DNA of 64,000 nt, from assembly GCF_001194135.2 (NCBI RefSeq), contig NC_068982.1, positions 182,999,290-183,063,289 on the forward strand, read 5' to 3'. Position numbers and translations under genes: made by a program. The notes below the pieces were generated by a model that saw only the letters and a program-made list of their open reading frames with translations, did not search any database and was not told the origin of the DNA. Positions 11,836 to 62,840 of the stretch are shown here, piece after piece; within the stretch, counting starts at the first letter, position 1; each line of letters begins with the position of its first letter. The DNA is from Octopus bimaculoides. Lineage: Eukaryota.

Positions 11836-12060
11836 CTATTCTCTTTACTCTTTTACTCATTTACTTGTTTCAGTCATTTGACTGCGGCCATGCTGAAGCC
11901 CTGCCTTTAGTCAAGCAAATCAACCCCAGGACTTATTCTTTATAAGCCTAGTACTTATTCTATCGGCATCTTTTGCCGAACCGCTAAGTTAATGTGACGT
12001 AAACACACCAGCATCGGTTGTCAAGTGATGTGGGTGGGGGGGATAAACGCAGTCACACAA

Positions 12061-12098
<38 letters not shown>

Positions 12099-12260
12099 GA
12101 CGGGATTCTTTCAGTTTCCGTCTACCAAATCCACTCACAAGGCTTTGGTCAGCCCGAGGCTATAGTAGAAGGCACTCGCCTAAGGTGCCACGCAGTGGGA
12201 CCGAACCCGAAACAATGTGGTTGGGAAGAAATCTTCTTACCACAGAGCCACACCTGCGCC
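11836..12260 (-). mobile_element. Family A tRNA-derived SINE, full length
   Basis: Head GGCGCAGGTGTGGCTCTGTGGTAAG with B box GGGTTCGGTCC, internal (CA/TA)n, tail gactgaaacaagtaaa. Repeated across the window. Confidence 0.85.
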
Positions 12261-12446
12261 TATATATATCTTGGTTTTATCTTGAAGAGTTCGTTAAAGG
12301 AAAGAAAGCGGTAATAAAGAATTATCCAAAATTCTGACGGCCTTCTTTTTCATAATATTACAATATTTATATATATATGCATAAGTATATATATACATAT
12401 ATNNNNNNNNNNNNNNNNNNNNNNNNNNNNNNNNNNNNNNNNNNNN

Positions 12447-35647: not shown

Positions 35648-35812
35648 GCGTAGGAGTGGCTGTGTGGTAAGTAGCTTGCTTACCAACCACATGGTTCCGG
35701 GTTCAATCCCACTGCGTAGCACCTTGGGCAAGTGTCTTCTACTTTAACCTCAGGCCGACCAAAGCCTAGTGAGTGGATTTGGTAGACGGAAACTGAAAGA
35801 AGCCCGTCGTAT
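35648..35812 (+). mobile_element. Family A SINE, 5' part running into a gap
   Basis: Homologous to 11836-12260. Confidence 0.8.
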
Positions 35813-35982
35813 ATATGTATGTATGTAATGTATGTAATGTATGTATGTATGTATGTATGTATGTNNNNNNNNNNNNNNNNNNNNNNNNNNNNNNNNNNNN
35901 NNNNNNNNNNNNNNNNNNNNNNNNNNNNNNNNNNNNNNNNNNNNNNNNNNNNNNNNNNNNNNNNNNNNNNNNNNNNNNNNNN

Positions 35983-36041
<59 letters not shown>

Positions 36042-37379
36042 TATATATATATATACATATATATTGGTTCAAACAAAGAAGGGTACCCTTAGTATTACTG
36101 GAACTTGTGAAACTATATATAAAACATGATGAAGAATAACGTTGAAATTTGGAAAAGCCTTGCAAATGTTTGCTTTTCCGTTTACAGCTAGCATTTGCTC
36201 TGTATACGTTAGCTTCTCATTCGCTTTGTTTGCAAATCTTTACTTTTCCGAGATTGTGACTTATATAGATAGTAAAACAACCAAGCGCACTGACAGCAAC
36301 AGAAATTTAAATTTATCTGTATGCATATGTACGTATGCAGGTATATATATATATATATAATATATATTTGTTCAAGTGTATATATATCCATAGACTGGTG
36401 TGTGCTTATCTCTGAATGTATGCGTATGTAGGCATGTGAATGTTTGTAAATATGTGTTGCGATTCTCATCGCAGTCACCCACTGTCATTTACAATGGATC
36501 AAAGATCCGATCTAGATATCGATTTTGACGTTAATCAGTTTCCTGTTACCCATTATTGATATTGAAATATTAAGATTGAGTTTATCTGTGATCGATTGTT
36601 CCACTTTGAAAACAGAATATTTTGCCGAATTTCGATTCCTAATACTGATATCTAATATTGATTAAGAAAATCATGAGAAATATCGATCTAGATTCTTTTT
36701 AAGTCTTTGTTTTGCAGAAAAGAATGGGTGCCATATGACGGCAGAAATGAAAACATCTAAGTACAGGGCTACATGCAGGGAAGAAGTGTCACAATGTCGA
36801 AGACTCGGTGTTTGATTTTACGTGTTTCATATTATGTATAGTGCGCAGAAGAGATTAGAGATGTCAATATAAATAGTTTAAAGGGAGAATGGCAGAAAGT
36901 ATTAGAAAGTTGGTCTGAGGGTTCACAACAAACTAAACGTCTTTAAAGACACCCAAGGATCGTGGGTTGTAAATTTAATCCACCTGGGTAATGATTAAGC
37001 TTACAATCCAAAATTGAGTAAAATTGAGTAGATTTTCGTAATATACTATAATGTAGATGCAAGCAAGAAGCAAGGGTCTTTTCTTTATTTCTTTTCTCTT
37101 TTATTTGCTGGGTCTTGAAGAAGGAACAGCACCCATGGCTTTCGCAGACTTTCTGATACTAGTAAGATTGATTTTTTCTTTTTGTTTATTTTAGTTAAAC
37201 ATGGATAAAAGAAGAGGTTGTGCTCATGGTCTTTGCAGGCCCTCGGAGACTAATCAGCTGAATGCCGTTAATATTCCGTCTTAAACTGTTGCAAATCAAC
37301 AATTGCCGGTAATGTATCACCTGCTTAAGTATGGATCTGTTCGTCGTATTCTTTGCATGAGAGTGAAACAAAGAGGCAA

Positions 37380-41210: not shown

Positions 41211-41254
41211 TAATCTTAAATTAACGTTTATCATTAAAAGTTATAATAATCATA

Positions 41255-41570
41255 GATGCAGGAGTGACCGTGTGGTAAGAAGTTTGCTTCCCAACCACAT
41301 GGTTCCGGGTTCAGTCTCACTGCGTGACACCTTTGGCAAGTGTCTTCTACTATAGCTCGTGTGAATGTGTTTGCGTGCTTGTTCCTCACCATCACCTGAC
41401 AACCGATGTTGGCTTGTTTACGCTCTCGTAACTTAGTAGTTCCGCAAGAGAGGCCGATAGAATAAGTACCAGGCTTTAAAATAAATAAGTACTGAGATCG
41501 ATTCATTCGACTAAAATTCTTCAAGGCAGGGCTGCATCGTGGCCGCAATCTAATGACTGAAACAAGTGAC
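41255..41570 (+). mobile_element. Family A SINE with an internal deletion
   Basis: Head and tail homologous to family A; central part after ctactatagc is missing. Confidence 0.8.
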
Positions 41571-42531
41571 AAAAAAATATCATTATTTCAAAATCAACAT
41601 TTATCAGGAACAGCCATAACCATCTTCTTGCACTTTATTTAGCCATCGTGTTTCTACTACTAAATAGAGTATCACTTTTTCAGGTGTGATTTGAAGGATA
41701 TTAGGCTGCTATTTTTAGCATGGCTAAAAACAATATGGAGGGTTTTTTCCTTAACATCTATGCGGTGTTAAAGCTGTTGCCCATAGATGTTGCCTGTGTG
41801 TGAATGATCAGAGAACAACGAAGGGTGGTATCATGTAAAGGTGAGTGCATAATAAAGTTAATCCGTGCCCGGTCCATCAGCAGGACCTGAGTTTAGCTGA
41901 CTTGAGTACAACTCATTCTTGATTGATTTTAATAGGGTCCACTCTGTTTGAAACTACCACTACCACCTGACTTTGGATAGCTTCCATTCAGTTAGAATCA
42001 ATCGGCTCACATCTCAAATCCAATTAAATGGAGTTCATCCTCAATTCCTCCTACCAGTGAGGTAACCCAATATGCAGAGTCAGTGGAGCAACGGATAGAG
42101 TGTTTCGCGGGAATCATTCCGGAGACGGCGGCGGAGGCGGCGGCGAAGACGGCGGCGAAGACGGCGGCGAAGGCGGCGGCGAAGGCGGCGGCGGAGGCNN
42201 NNNNNNNNTTGGTAGTGGTGGTGGTCGTAGTCGTCGTCGTCGTCGTCGTCGTCGTCGTAGTCGTCTTCGTGCTACTGGTGTTAGTGCTAGTGACAGTGGT
42301 AATGGTGCTTAGGATGCCGGTGACGATGGTGGTAGTGATAGAGCTGATAACGATGGAGGTAACTAACATACAGTATATTTCATCCTTTATGGCCCCTATG
42401 GAAATTTGCCATCATTTCACCATTCCTGTCTCGGACATATCTACGGGTTCGGTCACTTGACACTAGCCATCATCATCACCATCATCACCAACACTGCCAC
42501 TACCACCACAATCATCCTCATCATCATCAGT

Positions 42532-44455: not shown

Positions 44456-45539
44456 GGAAAGCGCTTTTGTACGTATCTTTATATCACAGGTAACGACGGT
44501 CTATTTGGACGTGATCTGCACTCAAGCATTCTTAGGGCTGCAATCACCGTCCAGCCGCTACTCAGGACCAAGCTGTTCCTATTAATGGCTTCAGACTCAA
44601 TGTTAGATAACTTCAGCTAATTACAGCCAATCGTAATAAAAAAACTTGTCTCTTAATACTAGGATTTATGTGTGAAACGATATATTAACAGATATACAAC
44701 CTATCTTCAAAGATGTGTTGTGAACGTTTTGAAGATAGAAAGTTAATATGATGGCAAGCACCTAGGAATTTACTTGGAATTAGAATAACATTAACTTAGA
44801 TAATCTGGCGGCAAAGTAGATAATCCAACATAGACGGATTATCCAATTTGCCGGATTAATTGAAAATAATCCGTAGTGTATCTACTCGCACGAGCGCGTG
44901 TGCATGTTTATAATATATATGTATATATCTTTTACTTGTTTCAGTCATTAGACTGCAGCTATGTTGGGGTACCATATATGTATATATCTTTTACTTGTTT
45001 CAGTCATNNNNNNNNNNNNNNNNNNNNNNNNNNNNNNNNNNNNNNNNNNNNNNNNNNNNNNNNNNNNNNNNNNNNNNNNNNNNNNNNNNNNNNNNNNNNN
45101 NNNNNNNNNNNNNNNNNNNNNNNNNNNNNNNNNNNNNNNNNNNNNNNNNNNNNNNNNNNNNNNNNNNNNNNNNNNNNNNNNNNNNNNNNNNNNNNNNNNN
45201 NNNNNNNNNNNNNNNNNNNNNNNNNNNNNNNNNNNNNNNNNNNNNNNNNNNNNNNNNNNNNNNNNNNNNNNNNNNNNNNNNNNNNNNNNNNNNNNNNNNN
45301 NNNNNNNNNNNNNNNNNNNNNNNNNNNNNNNNNNNNNNNNNNNNNNNNNNAATATGATGGCAAGCACCTAGGAATTTACTTGGAATTAGAATAACATTAA
45401 CTTAGATAATCTGGCGGCAAAGTAGATAATCCAACATAGACGGATTATCCAATTTGCCGGATTAATTGAAAATAATCCGTAGTGTATCTACTCGCACGAG
45501 CGCGTGTGCATGTTTATAATATATATGTATATATAAAAG

Positions 45540-45902
45540 ACATTAACTGTATAAAAGTCAATACGAAGTGTATTCCATCCAATGAGAGTTCAATATTACT
45601 AAACGTTTCAGCTACATGTACTTATCGCGCTACTAATAGTTTCCTGTACTCGCGTAGGTTCATCAGGCGCCAATCAAAACGCTCAGTAATCTTGACTCAA
45701 AACGAAAAATTGCACAGCACACTCTTCACGTCTGTACTCAACGCGTCACTGCGGGCAAATAGCACGACCAACAGACACGAAAATTTTTCCGCATGCTCAG
45801 GAAGGACTCGATCACTTAATACCCAAGCGGATTTTGCTCACGCATTATTATTTTGTGCAAAAGAAAAGTCAAGGTCAAAAATTTTTTGACTACACCTCGT
45901 AT
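45540..45902 (-). mobile_element. Possible mariner/Tc-derived remnant
   Basis: TIR-like end gtcaaaattttttgactacacctcgta; weak YRK..AR*V remnant. Confidence 0.35.
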
Positions 45903-46616: not shown

Positions 46617-46857
46617 CAGTGGTTCCCAACTTGTGGTCCACAGACCTCTGGTGGTCCGCAAAGGCAGTACTGGGTGTCCGTGAACTAAATTCAAAATTTC
46701 ATGGCTGTGTAATAAGTAGTTTGCTTACCAACCACATGGTTCCGGGTTCAGTCTCACTGCGTGGCATCTTGGGCAAGTGTCTTCTACTATAACCTCGGGC
46801 CGACCAAAGACTTGTGAGTGAATTTGGTAGAAAGAAACTGAAAGAAGCTCGTCGTAC

Positions 46858-46956
<99 letters not shown>

Positions 46957-47179
46957 TGTGTTTGTGTGTATGTTTGTGTGTCTGCGTTTGTCCCCCCACC
47001 TTCTATTGACAACTGATGCTGGTGTGTTTACGTCCCCCTAACTTAGAGGCTCGGTAAAATTGACCGATAGAATAGGTATTAGGCTTGCAAAGAATAAGTC
47101 GATTTGTTCAACAAAAGGTGGTGCTCTAACATGGCCGCAGTCAAATGACTGAAACAAGTAAAAGAGAATATATATATAC

Positions 47180-53646: not shown

Positions 53647-54245
53647 TTTTTTATACCCTAGTAACTCTATAATAACCTACAGAAGACAATTAAAAATTTT
53701 CTATTATTACATTAACGCTGGTGCGATTATTAATAATATATAAGATTTCTGTTCTAGATATTAGTTAAAATGACATGAGTGACAAGGTCATTGTATCTGA
53801 AATGAAGATTTATATTTACTGAGCCTGAAATCACAGAGAAAATGTTGACTGTTAGAAAATCATATAGAAAAAGAACCACTTTGTGGCTACATGTTCAATC
53901 ATTTCAAAGTGGTGAGTAATATTTTGCTTTTACTTCAGTTCCGAAGTCGTGTCAATAAAGCGAAAATAGGTGAAAAAGTCAGATGAGCTTTCCAGATCTG
54001 AAAAAACAACTAACAATCTAACAGAACATATCGCAACCACGCAAGTATTCTTCCCTGAATTGGGGGAGACTTCACGTGAGTAAATTTAGCATTAAATTAT
54101 TGACGCAAACAAAAGAAATTCAGTGACTGGTGACACAACAATTCAAAGATAGATATTTCTTTCGAAATTAGAATTCAAAGTCGGCACTCGCTCTTGACAT
54201 TGCTGTTTCGAACTTGAAGGTCATCCTTCATACTCAGTAACATCG

Positions 54246-55921: not shown

Positions 55922-56113
55922 TAATAATAATAATAATATTAGTAATCTATCCATCTAATAGGTATATCTATATCATGTATTTATTTTATGCAGTCGTGAT
56001 GTATTCGTGTACATCATATATTCGTATAGTTGATATACCTATATCATGTATTCATGTAGTCAGTATGGTGAACTGAACAGATGAGGACTTAAAAAGCGGA
56101 CAACGTAGAAAAG

Positions 56114-56201
56114 ATGTCAAAATATTTTTTGAAATGGAAACAACGTATTCACAATGAAAATGACGTGTCTAAAGAAGATGTCTTTCAGTTTATCGTAATA
56201 G
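56114..56201 (+). CDS. Rab27-like small GTPase, coding exon 1 (MSKYFLKWKQRIHNENDVSKEDVFQFIVI + first base of Gly)
   Basis: ATG at 56114 with an in-frame TAA upstream at 56090. Ends in a perfect phase-1 donor G|GTAAGT. FQFIVI-G supplies the hydrophobic beta1 strand that precedes a P-loop and splices in frame to GC-GAT of the next exon. Confidence 0.8.
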
Positions 56202-56313
56202 GTAAGTATGGAAGAGAGGATCGCGGTTAGAACGATGTGTAACCTATTGAATATTGAAATATTTCTGTTGCAAGATAAAAACATGTATATAGACACAAAC
56301 ACTCATACATACA

Positions 56314-57819: not shown

Positions 57820-58074
57820 CAATGATTAATTCATCTTTGGATATTGCCCTTCAGTCAATAAATTCGAGAGGAATTTATCGTGTGTAGGTCCCTAACTTAA
57901 AAGGGTATGCTAACATAAATGTTTTAATTAGGCTCGGTTGACAACTCCGTTAACCTGCTTTACCTTAGAGGCTAGTCATCTTTCTTTGGATGGTCGTATA
58001 ACTGTTTTTCGCATATTTAATATTTCCCTTTTAAAAGTCTGTAACTAACTTTATTATGCATGATTTTATTACAG

Positions 58075-58181
58075 GCGATGCTTCAGTCGGCAAAACAACA
58101 TGGATCAATCATTTTTTCAGCGGCTATACAAGCAGGAGTTTTGCCCCGACGGTCGGAATTGATTTTCGTTGTAAAAGAATG
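58075..58181 (+). CDS. Rab27-like small GTPase, coding exon 2 (G-DASVGKTTWINHFFSGYTSRSFAPTVGIDFRCKRM)
   Basis: Acceptor ttttattacag| and donor ATG|gtcagt. Contains the G1 P-loop GDASVGKT and the switch I/RabF1 motif PTVGIDF. Confidence 0.93.
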
Positions 58182-58499
58182 GTCAGTAACAAGGGAACAC
58201 CTTTATAAAAGGGGTCAATGTAAATAGACTAGTGTTTTTTTTTTAATTATTTTTTGTACACATCTTTCAAAATCATATAACCATATATAGTACTACTGAC
58301 ACGGTACGAATCTATCGTACTATCGACAATGTTACATGCACCTATTGGTCTATTATGATAACACACACATTATACAGTGCTTTAGATACATTACACTCTG
58401 TTGTATAACTAACACGATGTATATTATAGTCCACGTATATAGAGAGGGCTTCTCAATCACAAGAACAAATATCTACATGGGCTTCTGCTCAAATGTTCC

Positions 58500-59530
58500 A
58501 TCATTCCTACACACATCCGGCATCGAACTTGCTATTTACCTTCGACCATACGCTGGCGTCTTCATCATCCAAACTAGAATCCTACTAGGCCCAACCAACG
58601 TTCAGCGTAACCTTCCACATCGAATGTACACCTTCCAAAATACTGCGTACTCTACAATACACTATAGATAGACAAGGCATGTTATTGGCTGGTTGAATGG
58701 TTTCATAAGCTCCTCCCTAGTGTCCATAACAACACTCAAACAGTTCCCGTGGTCAGTCACTTTATCATGTCTGGTCAGTCAGCGTCAACATCTTGGCTTG
58801 TCTTTTCCTAAACTATGGCTCATCTTACTTACGTAAAGGCATGGGATAATGACTTATTTTTATTCTCTGAATCTTTGTTCTGCAAGAAAGGAATGTATGC
58901 CTCAAATTCCTACGAATCTGCTCTACCACCACAAAATTCTTACTGCCCACGTTCGAAGCAGACTTCTCAACCATACAATCATGGCTATCGAATATATATA
59001 TATATTCGATATACCCACATACCCCACCTCTACCTCCACCTCCAGCCTAACCGACACCCCACCCGTGCTTTCCCCACTCTCGCCTCTTCACCTCCCAACA
59101 CCATCACACCACACCACGCTACACCTTACCACGCAACACATCACATCACAACACACCACCACTGACCAATTCCCATCCCCACATTTTCACACCTTCACAC
59201 CTACATACACACACGCATAAGTTAAGATCACCAGCATTCTCTCACACACACGCACGCACCTTTGTTTTGGGATCACTACTACTTTGTTATCTCCCCTTCT
59301 TCTTAACTCCCCTGTGTGACCCTTCTGTCCGGCATTCGCCATGATAGATCGCTGACCACTACACACATTTTTTTGTCTCCTTGTTTTTCTCCTTGTTTCT
59401 TTTTGTGTTCCTTTCTGTAGAAGAGCGTAGGACGAAACGTTAAAGACTTTCTCAATTCCCGAGCGTTATACTAATACATCTATTAATTTTCAACACCAAC
59501 TGTCTTCGTCTGTTGTTTTTTTTTTGTGAA
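58500..59530 (+). mobile_element. Degraded Penelope-like element (GIY-YIG remnant plus terminal repeat with hammerhead-like motif) in Rab intron 2
   Basis: Remnants RTC and WLVEWFHKLLPSVHNNTQTVPVVSHFIMSGQS resemble RLADRFAEHLRSV..PVAxHF..GHS. The 3' repeat 59360-59530 matches 57361-57530. Confidence 0.6.
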
Positions 59531-61440: not shown

Positions 61441-62157
61441 CAACATATAGACAACGCAACACAAGACTTTAAAAAAAGACTTTCACTTTGAACAATTTAT
61501 GAAGGTATGCGCTTGACTAACAAATAGTTTTACTGGCAGCGTAACGACGGGTAACGACATACCGTCGTTCATTTTAGTCCCTCTCTTTTGACAACGGTTA
61601 GATTGTATAACCATGACGAGCGTTTTTGTCTCTCTCTAACGTATATAGCAAATTTATTCCGTTTACGAATGCAGAAACAGCTAAAATTTTGGCGTGTACC
61701 CCATTGTGAACTATAGTTCTCTATGTATTTTATTCACAGCTTCGTGTTCCATATTTTTCTGAACAGCAATCTAATTGATCTGTCGTCTGTTTCATCAATC
61801 TTTTTTTTTTTTTCTGCCATCTATTTCACCTAACTTATTCTTCATCCGTCATCTCTTTCATCAGTCATCCGTCTATGAACAATTAATTGAATACCAGCAG
61901 GAGATTGGTCACTATTTAAAATCAACTACTATAATTTTTTTGCACAAAACAATGACAATCTTTAGTGAAAATAAAACTGTTGCTGCTATGATGATGATGA
62001 TGATGATGATGATGACGACGATGACGACGATTGGTGGGGAGGAGAAAAAATGGTGAAAGAGAAGTGTAAATAAGAGGACGAGGTGTTGATATGAAAGAGG
62101 AGATAAGGATCGTTAGTAACTGTTTTTTGTTGCTTTTTTTGTTTTTTCACGTTGCAG

Positions 62158-62252
62158 AACTATAGAATCATCCAAACATTACCGAACGGACAGTCAAAGG
62201 TTTACTATCGCCAAGCATCTGTACAAATCTGGGATACGGCTGGAATGGAAAG
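62158..62252 (+). CDS. Rab27-like small GTPase, coding exon 3 (NYRIIQTLPNGQSKVYYRQASVQIWDTAGME-R); gene continues beyond window
   Basis: Long polypyrimidine tract plus ttgcag| acceptor in phase 0, matching exon 2. RabF2/G3 QIWDTAG. AG|GT donor inside the Arg codon. The long beta2-beta3 insert is typical of Rab27. Confidence 0.92.
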
Positions 62253-62840
62253 GTGCCCCTGTTTGTATATAATTATAAACAAGTATTCATTTTATGTATA
62301 TGTGAGTGTTGGTGTGTGTGTGTATGTATATCTATATATCCATATATGTGTGTTTATTACTATATATATTATATCATATTATGATGTATATATATATATA
62401 TATATATTATTTTGTTTAAACAAAATAATATATTCCTCTATACACAATCATACAAAAAAACCACCTTTTTTGTATTTATTTTTACTCGCATATATATATA
62501 TATATATATANNNNNNNNNNNNNNNNNNNNNNNNNNNNNNNNNNNNNNNNNNNNNNNNNNNNNNNNNNNNNNNNNNNNNNNNNNNNNNNNNNNNNNNNNN
62601 NNNNNNNNNNNNNNNNNNNNNNNNNNNNNNNNNNNNNNNNNNNNNNNNNNNNNNNNNNNNNNNNNNNNNNNNNNNNNNNNNNNNNNNNNNNNNNNNNNNN
62701 NNNNNNNNNNNNNNNNNNNNNNNNNNNNNNNNNNNNNNNNNNNNNNNNNNNNNNNNNNNNNNNNNNNNNNNNNNNNNNNNNNNNNNNNNNNNNNNNNNNN
62801 NNNNNNNNNNNNNNNNNNNNNNNNNNNNNNNNNNNNNNNN

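What the first reader, a model, noticed from the sequence alone, without database searches (positions are those of the whole stretch)
62158..62252. Rab27-like GTPase with Met replacing the catalytic switch II Gln (DTAGME)
Seen: codon ATG at 62245-62247 gives WDTAGMER rather than WDTAGQER, while the P-loop GDASVGKT and PTVGIDF are intact. Established: this Gln positions the hydrolytic water, and Q-to-L substitutions make Rabs GTPase-deficient; some natural Rabs (Rab20, Rab24, Rab25) also lack it. Inference: a divergent, possibly constitutively GTP-bound paralogue of the secretory-granule Rab27 group, perhaps cephalopod-specific.
Basis: partly seen in the sequence, partly recalled or inferred. 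Interest (0 to 1): 0.7.

Follow-up and report, generated by a model that had tools for sequence, protein, structure and literature searches.

The report
Octopus Rab27-like GTPase lacking catalytic glutamine
This is a real, spliced and expressed Octopus bimaculoides gene for a Rab27-derived small GTPase whose catalytic glutamine is replaced by methionine; octopods conserve that change in a tandem pair of such genes, so it is a deliberate variant of the molecular switch, but its biochemical effect is untested.

Summary
ATG at 62245-62247 lies in a coding exon (62158-62252, + strand) that reads ...VQIWDTAGME(R). A 3,250-nt RNA contig joins this exon, without mismatch, to the start-codon exon (56060-56201) and the P-loop exon (58075-58181). 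The window holds only the 5' half of the gene.

The full product is 237 aa (RefSeq XP_014787369.1, 'Rab-27B-like', Octopus bimaculoides). It has intact G1-G5 nucleotide-binding motifs and a C-terminal CCXX.

PDB searches put it clearly nearest Rab27A/B: 140 bits against 103 for the best non-Rab27 chain.

The methionine is neither an error nor a sign of decay:
- It is present in O. sinensis and O. vulgaris orthologues.
- It is present in a second, tandem paralogue (44% identical) that also exists in Argonauta hians.
- Of 121 homologues retrieved, 115 have Gln. Only the five octopod proteins have Met.
- dN/dS is about 0.2-0.4.

The P-loop is also altered across the whole family (GDSGVGK to GDASVGK).

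The 'constitutively GTP-bound' reading is plausible but untested. Published work on Rab35, Rab1 and Rab5 shows that losing this Gln can impair GAP action, DENN-GEF activation or basal hydrolysis, depending on the Rab.

I could not test whether a canonical DTAGQE Rab27 coexists in Octopus, or whether squids have this family.

Verdict: a new variant of a known kind, of modest interest.

The parts
62158..62252 (+). Third coding exon (95 nt): beta2-beta3 hairpin plus the start of switch II, NYRIIQTLPNGQSKVYYRQASVQIWDTAGME(R)
   Evidence: Sequence and translation. The X12 RNA contig covers 62157-62254 with 0 mismatches and is spliced on both sides. Exon coordinates were reproduced by an exact spliced mapping of P0003 on L001.
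62245..62247 (+). ATG codon = Met95 of the 237-aa protein, at the position of the catalytic switch II Gln (human Rab27A Gln78, Ras Gln61)
   Evidence: alignment. 115 of 121 homologues have Gln here.
58075..58181 (+). Second coding exon (107 nt): P-loop GDASVGKT and switch I PTVGIDF, ending ...RCKRM
   Evidence: The X12 RNA contig matches 58073-58181, and its loose ends are the neighbouring exons. Four other species show only synonymous or conservative changes here. Spliced mapping.
56060..56201 (+). Exon carrying the last 54 nt of the 5'UTR and the start codon (ATG 56114-56116), encoding MSKYFLKWKQRIHNENDVSKEDVFQFIVI-G. An in-frame TAA lies at 56090-56092, upstream of the start.
   Evidence: The X12 contig covers 56060-56202 with 0 mismatches. 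Spliced mapping.
54046..54075 (+). 3' end of a 5'UTR exon (donor CAC|gtgagt). The exon probably begins near 53939, but that boundary is inferred, not verified.
   Evidence: The X12 loose end upstream of 56060 maps here uniquely. X12 holds 37% of the sampled words of 53735-54075.
37284..37308 (+). 3' end of an alternative upstream non-coding exon. In one low-depth contig it is spliced directly to 62158, skipping the start-codon and P-loop exons.
   Evidence: X26 contig; unique match in the window; donor G|gtaatg.

Best explanation
The window holds the 5' half of a functional Octopus bimaculoides gene: 5'UTR exons plus the first three of five coding exons. Its product is a 237-aa prenylatable small GTPase descended from Rab27.

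Shown:
- The gene is spliced and transcribed in a restricted set of samples.
- All guanine-nucleotide-binding motifs are intact: G1 GDASVGKT, G2 Thr in PTVGIDF, G3 DTAG, G4 NKCD, G5 ETSAV. The C-terminus is CCTN.
- The residue that is Gln in essentially all canonical Rab27 proteins is Met. It is Met in every known member of a two-gene, head-to-tail octopod family.
- That family also shares a changed P-loop (Ser-Gly to Ala-Ser) and 11 other derived residues at Rab27-invariant sites.

Inferred:
- Both changes sit where the hydrolytic water and the GAP's catalytic fingers act. I therefore expect the protein still to bind GTP/GDP and Mg2+, but to have a slowed GTPase cycle, with low intrinsic hydrolysis and/or poor response to TBC1D10-type Rab27 GAPs.
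- By analogy with Rab35, it may also respond poorly to the DENN-type Rab27 GEF (MADD).
- It would then dwell long in the GTP state once loaded, acting as a slow or regulator-uncoupled membrane-traffic switch in a specialised, probably secretory, tissue.
For: Gene and transcript:
- three exons joined in a 3,250-nt RNA contig of depth 381, with 0 mismatches.
- an equally spliced contig in another species.

Full-length protein and annotation:
- P0003 = XP_014787369.1.
- the window is the same DNA as L001, and the five-exon model translates exactly to P0003.

Rab27 descent:
- Rab27B 140.6 bits against Rab1A 103.
- the paralogue scores 173.6 bits on Rab27A against 121.8 on Rab26.
- all named top hits are Rab27.
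- the AF2 model has pLDDT 84.5, and its best fold hits are Rab27A/B.

Conservation of Met:
- the codon is unchanged in three other species.
- O. sinensis orthologue, O. sinensis paralogue and Argonauta hians paralogue all read WDTAGME.
- two DTAGME/GDASVGK copies lie 32.7 kb apart on one strand in O. vulgaris.
- 115 of 121 homologues have Gln, and only the octopod proteins have Met.
- 13 shared derived residues.

Selection:
- omega 0.37 (O. bimaculoides against O. sinensis) and about 0.2 (O. sinensis against Argonauta, with dS about 1).

Mechanistic precedent:
- PMC3919270: switch II Gln mutation greatly reduces TBC1D10A action on Rab35 and TBC1D20 action on Rab1, reduces DENND1-stimulated exchange about 30-fold, and lowers basal hydrolysis of Rab5 more than fivefold.
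- PMC5902221 lists MADD (DENN) as the Rab27a GEF and TBC1D10A/B as its GAPs.
Against: - No biochemical measurement exists for this protein.
- TBC-domain GAPs supply their own Gln finger, and some Rab Gln mutants (Rab5, Rab33B) stay GAP-sensitive, so Met may be tolerated.
- The effect of Met specifically, as opposed to Leu or Ala, has not been measured for any Rab that I could find.
- omega of 0.2-0.4 is relaxed for a Rab, and the family evolves fast, so some functions of Rab27 may have been lost.
- The tissue of expression is unknown because run metadata are coded.
- Three 2026 RNA runs gave 0 reads at about 6% sampling.
Confidence: 0.6

Rival explanations
1. An ordinary cycling Rab. The Met is functionally near-neutral because the cognate TBC GAP provides both the Arg and Gln fingers in trans. 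The protein switches normally and merely has a lower basal hydrolysis rate.
For: Pan et al. 2006 and Gavriljuk et al. 2012, as summarised in PMC3919270: the Rab's own Gln does not take a direct part in TBC-catalysed hydrolysis. Rab5 Q80 mutants remain fully sensitive to RUTBC3. All other G motifs are intact.
Against: In the same study, the Rab35 mutant became resistant to TBC1D10A, and TBC1D10A is a Rab27 GAP. Gln is invariant in 62 canonical Rab27 proteins, so it is not a free position. The change co-occurs with a family-wide P-loop change at the same catalytic pocket.
Confidence: 0.25
2. A switch-dead Rab27 relative. Loss of Gln blocks DENN-GEF-mediated loading, as in Rab35 Q67A/L, so the protein is mostly GDP-bound or cycles only by spontaneous exchange. 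It would act as a scaffold, a decoy for Rab27 regulators or effectors, or have a nucleotide-independent role.
For: Rab35 Q67A/L is poorly activated by DENND1, is recruited only slowly to membranes and was found inactive, not dominant active. The Rab27 GEF is a DENN protein. Many Rab27-invariant surface residues have changed.
Against: The nucleotide-binding motifs and the prenylation cysteines are kept under purifying selection in both paralogues over a deep divergence. That argues for a nucleotide-dependent, membrane-bound function. A different GEF may serve it.
Confidence: 0.12
3. Not a functional feature: an assembly or sequencing error at the codon, or an unprocessed pseudogene that happens to be transcribed.
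For: The window is a gapped assembly (15 N runs). The gene evolves faster than typical Rabs.
Against: RNA contigs are identical to the genome. The same codon is found in other species and in the paralogue. The 237-codon ORF is intact, intron positions are conserved in four genes and omega is below 1.
Confidence: 0.02

Closest known systems
Rab27A / Rab27B (metazoan secretory-granule and lysosome-related-organelle Rabs)
   Same: - Best sequence match in the PDB by 37-52 bits over any other Rab, and best fold match.
- Extended beta2-beta3 hairpin.
- Switch II context WDTAG-ERFRSLT, plus the G1-G5 motifs.
- 48 of 99 Rab27-invariant columns are kept in all four octopod proteins.
   Different: - Gln78 (human numbering) is Met.
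- The P-loop is GDASVGK instead of GDSGVGK.
- The hairpin is 2-3 residues longer.
- The N-terminal DYDYLIK motif is replaced.
- The C-terminus is CCXX / CSCI / CTPCS instead of CXC.
- Identity is only about 35-45%.
- 30 Rab27-invariant sites are changed in all members.
Naturally Gln-less Rabs: Rab25 (Leu), Rab24 (Ser), Rab20 (Arg). From established knowledge; not re-tested here.
   Same: A natural replacement of the switch II catalytic Gln in an otherwise complete Rab G domain. The expected result is low intrinsic GTPase activity and an atypical regulatory cycle.
   Different: These belong to different Rab subfamilies, so the loss is independent. Met is a different residue; I know of no described natural Rab with Met here, and 'DTAGME' appears in no relevant paper. 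The distribution here is lineage-restricted (octopods), not vertebrate-wide.
Engineered Rab27A Q78L and Rab35/Rab1/Rab5 switch II Gln mutants
   Same: The same position carries a hydrophobic, non-amide side chain. The PDB Rab27A constructs that align best here carry Leu at this site (alignments).
   Different: Those are laboratory mutants in an otherwise wild-type background. Here the change is fixed, ancient and accompanied by P-loop and surface changes.

Membership tests
Rab family of small GTPases (Ras superfamily) | G1 Walker A, GxxxxGK[ST] | tested here: met
   GDASVGKT at residues 30-37, encoded at 58074-58097
Rab family of small GTPases (Ras superfamily) | G2 switch I Thr, G3 DxxG, G4 NKxD, G5 SAx | tested here: met
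   PTVGIDF, WDTAG, NKCD and ETSAV in P0003. The same motifs are present in P0011, P0012 and P0013.
Rab family of small GTPases (Ras superfamily) | Catalytic switch II Gln (DTAGQE) | tested here: not met
   Met95, codon ATG 62245-62247, in genome and RNA. A minority of accepted Rabs also lack this Gln, so it does not exclude membership of the Rab family.
Rab family of small GTPases (Ras superfamily) | C-terminal cysteine prenylation motif | tested here: met
   P0003 ends ...CNCCTN (CCXX type). The paralogues end CSCI and CTPCS. Actual prenylation was not tested.
Rab family of small GTPases (Ras superfamily) | Small-GTPase fold | tested here: met
   AF2 model: pLDDT 84.5, pTM 0.81. Foldseek top hits are Rab27A/B, Rab8 and Rab1, with target-normalised TM-score (TMt) 0.85-0.90. 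Pfam Ras and Roc domains on the N-terminal part.
Rab27 subfamily | Closest similarity to Rab27A/B over all other Rab subfamilies | tested here: met
   P0003: 140.6 bits (Rab27B) against 103.3 (Rab1A). P0013: 173.6 (Rab27A) against 121.8 (Rab26). All named top hits are Rab27.
Rab27 subfamily | Extended beta2-beta3 hairpin insertion relative to other Rabs | tested here: met
   The alignment to Rab27B spans the insertion, which is 2-3 residues longer here. A loop-deleted Rab27A construct scores lower.
Rab27 subfamily | Conservation of Rab27-invariant residues, including DTAGQE, GDSGVGKT, the DYDYLIK N-terminus and the CXC C-terminus | tested here: not met
   30 of 99 columns that are at least 90% conserved in 62 canonical Rab27 proteins are changed in all four octopod proteins. 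The C-terminus is not CXC.
Rab27 subfamily | Orthology or monophyly with Rab27 in a Rab-wide phylogeny, and its relation to a canonical octopus Rab27 | not tested
Rab27 subfamily | GTP-dependent binding of Slp/Slac2/Munc13-4 effectors | not testable with these tools
   At the switch II specificity positions I recall for melanophilin binding (human L84, F88, D91), the A-type has L, Y, Q and the B-type has L, Y, D. The identity of those specificity residues is from memory, not checked here.

The most novel reading that the evidence does not exclude
Octopods carry a clade of Rab27-derived GTPases about 100 million years old. In this clade the catalytic pocket has been remodelled as a unit (Gln to Met plus P-loop SG to AS), producing a switch that is uncoupled from the canonical Rab27 GAP and GEF. 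In the strongest version, these genes have replaced the canonical Rab27 in octopods, so regulated secretion in these animals would run on a hydrolysis-impaired Rab27.
Probability: 0.15. Interest if true: 0.65.

Novelty: new variant of a known kind. Interest (0 to 1): 0.35.

Why it matters
Rab27 controls the docking and release of secretory granules and lysosome-related organelles, and its Q78L mutant is the standard 'locked-on' laboratory tool.

A natural, long-conserved Met at that position, paired with a P-loop change and duplicated in tandem, offers a ready-made evolutionary experiment. It could show how far a Rab switch can be slowed or uncoupled from its GAP and GEF and still be useful.

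It may also mark a specialised secretory cell type in octopods. It matters for annotation too: 'Rab-27B-like' hides the atypical active site, and the O. vulgaris model fuses two genes.

It does not open a new category of system.

Tried and rejected
- **Short-peptide homologue searches.** The search for homologous proteins with the 68-aa and 107-aa spliced peptides found nothing. This was a word-index limitation, not absence: the exon peptide sent to the search of protein representatives later found the full protein.
- **Read laying on 61850-62500.** Narrowing to 62090-62290 worked.
- **The other hits (P0002, P0004-P0010).** P0005, P0008, P0009 and P0010 were fetched and are repeat proteins that share a 'NG..RVYY'-like motif with the hairpin. 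P0002, P0004, P0006 and P0007 were not fetched and look the same from their multiple matched stretches. All were rejected as chance.
- **Next exon inside the window.** Absent; it lies 2.6 kb beyond the window's end.
- **B-type paralogue near the gene in O. bimaculoides.** Not found within 10 kb downstream. In O. sinensis it starts about 16 kb downstream, so this is uninformative.
- **A-type copy near the Argonauta gene.** None within 10 kb on either side.
- **Literature.** Searches for 'DTAGME', Rab27 + octopus and Rab27 + cephalopod found nothing relevant. A search for the Rab27 effector-specificity residues was unhelpful.
- **Rfam and tRNA scans of the window.** Empty.
- **A-to-I RNA editing as a rescue.** Rejected on logic: editing AUG can give only GUG (Val), never a Gln codon.

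Full report
**1. Observation**

The stretch 62158-62252 (+ strand) translates in frame to NYRIIQTLPNGQSKVYYRQASVQIWDTAGME, with ATG at 62245-62247. It is bounded by a polypyrimidine/CAG acceptor and an AAAG|GTGCCC donor. A six-frame motif scan finds exactly one P-loop (GDASVGKT, 58074-58097), one TVGIDF (58149-58166) and one DTAGxE in the 64-kb window, all on the + strand.

**2. A real, spliced, transcribed gene**

Public runs of the same species hold this DNA. One RNA run (X12, 2015) contains a 3,250-nt contig of depth 381. It matches 56060-56202, 58073-58181 and 62157-62254 with zero mismatches, and its loose ends at each boundary are the neighbouring exon. This gives four exons in the window:
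- a 5'UTR exon ending at 54075;
- 56060-56201, with ATG at 56114 and an in-frame TAA eight codons upstream;
- 58075-58181;
- 62158-62252.

The contig continues with GTTTCGATCC..., so the protein reads ...WDTAGMERFRSLTLSYFR. That next exon is not in the window.

Expression looks restricted:
- Two other runs of the same 2015 study have no contig over the P-loop exon region.
- Three 2026 raw-read RNA runs gave no reads at about 6% sampling.
- About ten further RNA runs of the species hold none of the sampled words.
- A second run (X26) has a low-depth contig that joins an upstream exon ending at 37308 directly to 62158.
- An RNA run of a related species (organism D, X48) has an identically spliced contig of depth 61.

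**3. Full-length product and identity**

A scan of 1.84 billion representative proteins with the exon peptide returned P0003. It is 237 aa, 100% identical, and matches at residues 66-97, exactly the position the exon model predicts. P0003 is RefSeq XP_014787369.1/-370.1/-371.1, 'ras-related protein Rab-27B(-like) [Octopus bimaculoides]', and UniProt A0A0L8FSB4. Its genomic locus, L001 (GCA_001194135.2, CM046602.1), is base-identical to the window at an offset of 46,113. A five-exon model translates exactly to P0003, and the last two coding exons lie 0.8-2.5 kb beyond the window's end.

The protein has G4 NKCD, G5 ETSAV and a C-terminal CNCCTN. Apart from the Gln, the whole nucleotide-binding and prenylation apparatus is therefore present.

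**4. Family assignment**

PDB sequence searches give the following top scores.

| Query | Best Rab27 chain | Best non-Rab27 chain |
|---|---|---|
| 107-aa N-terminal half | Rab27A/B, 62 bits | Rab43, 52 bits |
| P0003, full length | Rab27B, 140.6 bits | Rab1A, 103.3 bits |
| P0013, paralogue | Rab27A, 173.6 bits | Rab26, 121.8 bits |

All named proteins among the best 120 database hits are Rab27A/B. An AlphaFold2 model (pLDDT 84.5, pTM 0.81) has Rab27A/B as its best Foldseek matches. The beta2-beta3 hairpin insertion typical of Rab27 is present and is 2-3 residues longer.

The protein is nevertheless highly derived:
- It is about 35-45% identical to canonical Rab27.
- Of 99 columns at least 90% conserved in 62 canonical Rab27 proteins, 48 are kept in all four octopod proteins and 30 are changed in all four.

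**5. The methionine is an old, conserved, family-wide state**

- Contigs of organisms B, F and G show no listed change at 62245-62247. Within this exon they show only one conservative (Ile to Val) and three synonymous changes.
- The P-loop exon shows three synonymous and two conservative changes across four species.
- The O. sinensis orthologue (P0011, 248 aa) reads WDTAGME.
- The O. vulgaris model (P0001) is a fusion of two adjacent genes, and both halves read WDTAGME.
- In O. vulgaris, the two DTAGME/GDASVGK copies lie 32.7 kb apart on the same strand.
- In O. sinensis, the second gene (P0013, 'Rab-27A-like') starts about 16 kb downstream of the first.
- Argonauta hians has a clear orthologue of the second gene (P0012, 69.7% identity to P0013), again with GDASVGKT and WDTAGME.
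- All four genes share internal exon sizes of 107, 95 and 228 nt, so the family arose by DNA-level duplication.
- The two types are only 44% identical, with saturated dS. They share 13 derived residues at Rab27-invariant sites, including S32A, G33S and Q95M. This points to a single origin of Gln-to-Met before the duplication and before the Octopus-Argonauta split.
- Of the 121 homologues retrieved, 115 have Gln and only the five octopod proteins have Met. The remaining one is a tandem-domain rotifer protein with Glu in one domain and Gln in the other.
- Nei-Gojobori estimates indicate purifying but comparatively relaxed selection:

| Comparison | dN | dS | omega |
|---|---|---|---|
| A-type, O. 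bimaculoides vs O. sinensis | 0.029 | 0.078 | 0.37 |
| B-type, O. sinensis vs Argonauta | 0.217 | 1.01 | about 0.2 |

**6. How it probably works**

Shown: a complete GTP/GDP-Mg-binding G domain with a non-amide, hydrophobic residue at the catalytic Gln position, and an Ala-Ser P-loop in place of Ser-Gly.

From established knowledge, the equivalent Gln orients the attacking water in Ras-like GTPases, and Q-to-L mutants are used as GTPase-deficient forms. The best-aligning PDB Rab27A constructs themselves carry Leu here.

Rabs are not uniform, however. Langemeyer et al. 2014 (PMC3919270) report three relevant results:
- TBC GAPs supply the catalytic Gln in trans.
- Gln mutation greatly reduces TBC1D10A action on Rab35 and TBC1D20 action on Rab1, but not RUTBC3 action on Rab5, where basal hydrolysis falls more than fivefold instead.
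- The same Gln is needed for DENN-GEF exchange. Catalytic efficiency (kcat/Km) for Rab35 falls from 2.3x10^4 to about 7.5x10^2 M^-1 s^-1, and Rab35 Q67A/L was found inactive, not dominant active.

Rab27a is listed with a DENN GEF (MADD) and with TBC1D10A/B as GAPs (PMC5902221).

My best inference is therefore a slowed or regulator-uncoupled switch that is long-lived in the GTP state once loaded. It is not simply a 'constitutively active' Rab27. I put this at about 0.6. Normal GAP-driven cycling is about 0.25, and a largely unloaded or decoy protein about 0.12. Error or pseudogene is effectively excluded. A-to-I RNA editing, common in octopus, cannot recreate a Gln codon from AUG.

**7. What remains open**

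- whether a canonical DTAGQE Rab27 coexists in Octopus;
- whether decapodiform cephalopods or other molluscs have DTAGME relatives (none appeared among the hits, which is weak evidence);
- which tissue run X12 comes from.

The B-type copy was not located in O. bimaculoides itself. L001 ends 10 kb past the A-type stop.

**8. Novelty and score**

The gene models exist in RefSeq under a generic Rab-27B-like name. No paper in the searchable library mentions the motif or a cephalopod Rab27 variant. Natural loss of the catalytic Gln is a known phenomenon in other Rab subfamilies (Rab20, Rab24, Rab25; from established knowledge).

This is a new variant of a known kind: a lineage-restricted, duplicated Rab27 derivative with a remodelled catalytic pocket. 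It is of modest interest (0.35) unless it turns out to be the only Rab27 of octopods.

Noticed in passing
window 37284-37308 (exon end) joined to 62158: A 193-nt contig in run X26 splices an upstream non-coding exon (donor G|gtaatg at 37308) directly to the DTAGME exon. It skips the start-codon and P-loop exons, so it is either an alternative 5' exon with exon skipping or splicing noise. RefSeq lists three transcript accessions for the same protein.
   Followed up: partly
window 56081-56116: An in-frame upstream ATG (56081) is closed by TAA (56090-56092) in O. bimaculoides. In organism G and O. sinensis the TAA reads TTC, which opens an 11-residue N-terminal extension (MRTFKADNIKK; P0011 is 248 aa).
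   Followed up: partly
L003 10001-54667 (O. vulgaris OX597815.1): The O. vulgaris protein CAI9718309.1 (360 aa) is a mis-fused model of two adjacent Rab27-like genes. It joins the first four coding exons of the first gene, through intron-derived residues, to the second gene. A SASH1-like gene lies downstream on the opposite strand.
   Followed up: partly
window 12018-12314 (+), 35680-36165 (-), 41234-41572 (-), 46725-47012 (-): A dispersed repeat carries a conserved ORF fragment (...EDTCPRCHAVRLNPEPCGW...) in at least four copies on both strands, presumably an octopus SINE or other transposable element. The window also has 15 assembly gaps (4,199 N) and very dense microsatellites.
   Followed up: no
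window 58190-58900: Low-depth (3-7x) contigs of RNA run X12 cover intron sequence downstream of the P-loop exon, against depth 381 for the spliced transcript. This is consistent with pre-mRNA or residual DNA in the library.
   Followed up: no
window 44876-45394 and 45482-45889: Two ORFs begin with the identical peptide MYLLARARVHVYNIYVYI about 600 bp apart, across an N gap. This is a local direct duplication or an assembly artefact.
   Followed up: no
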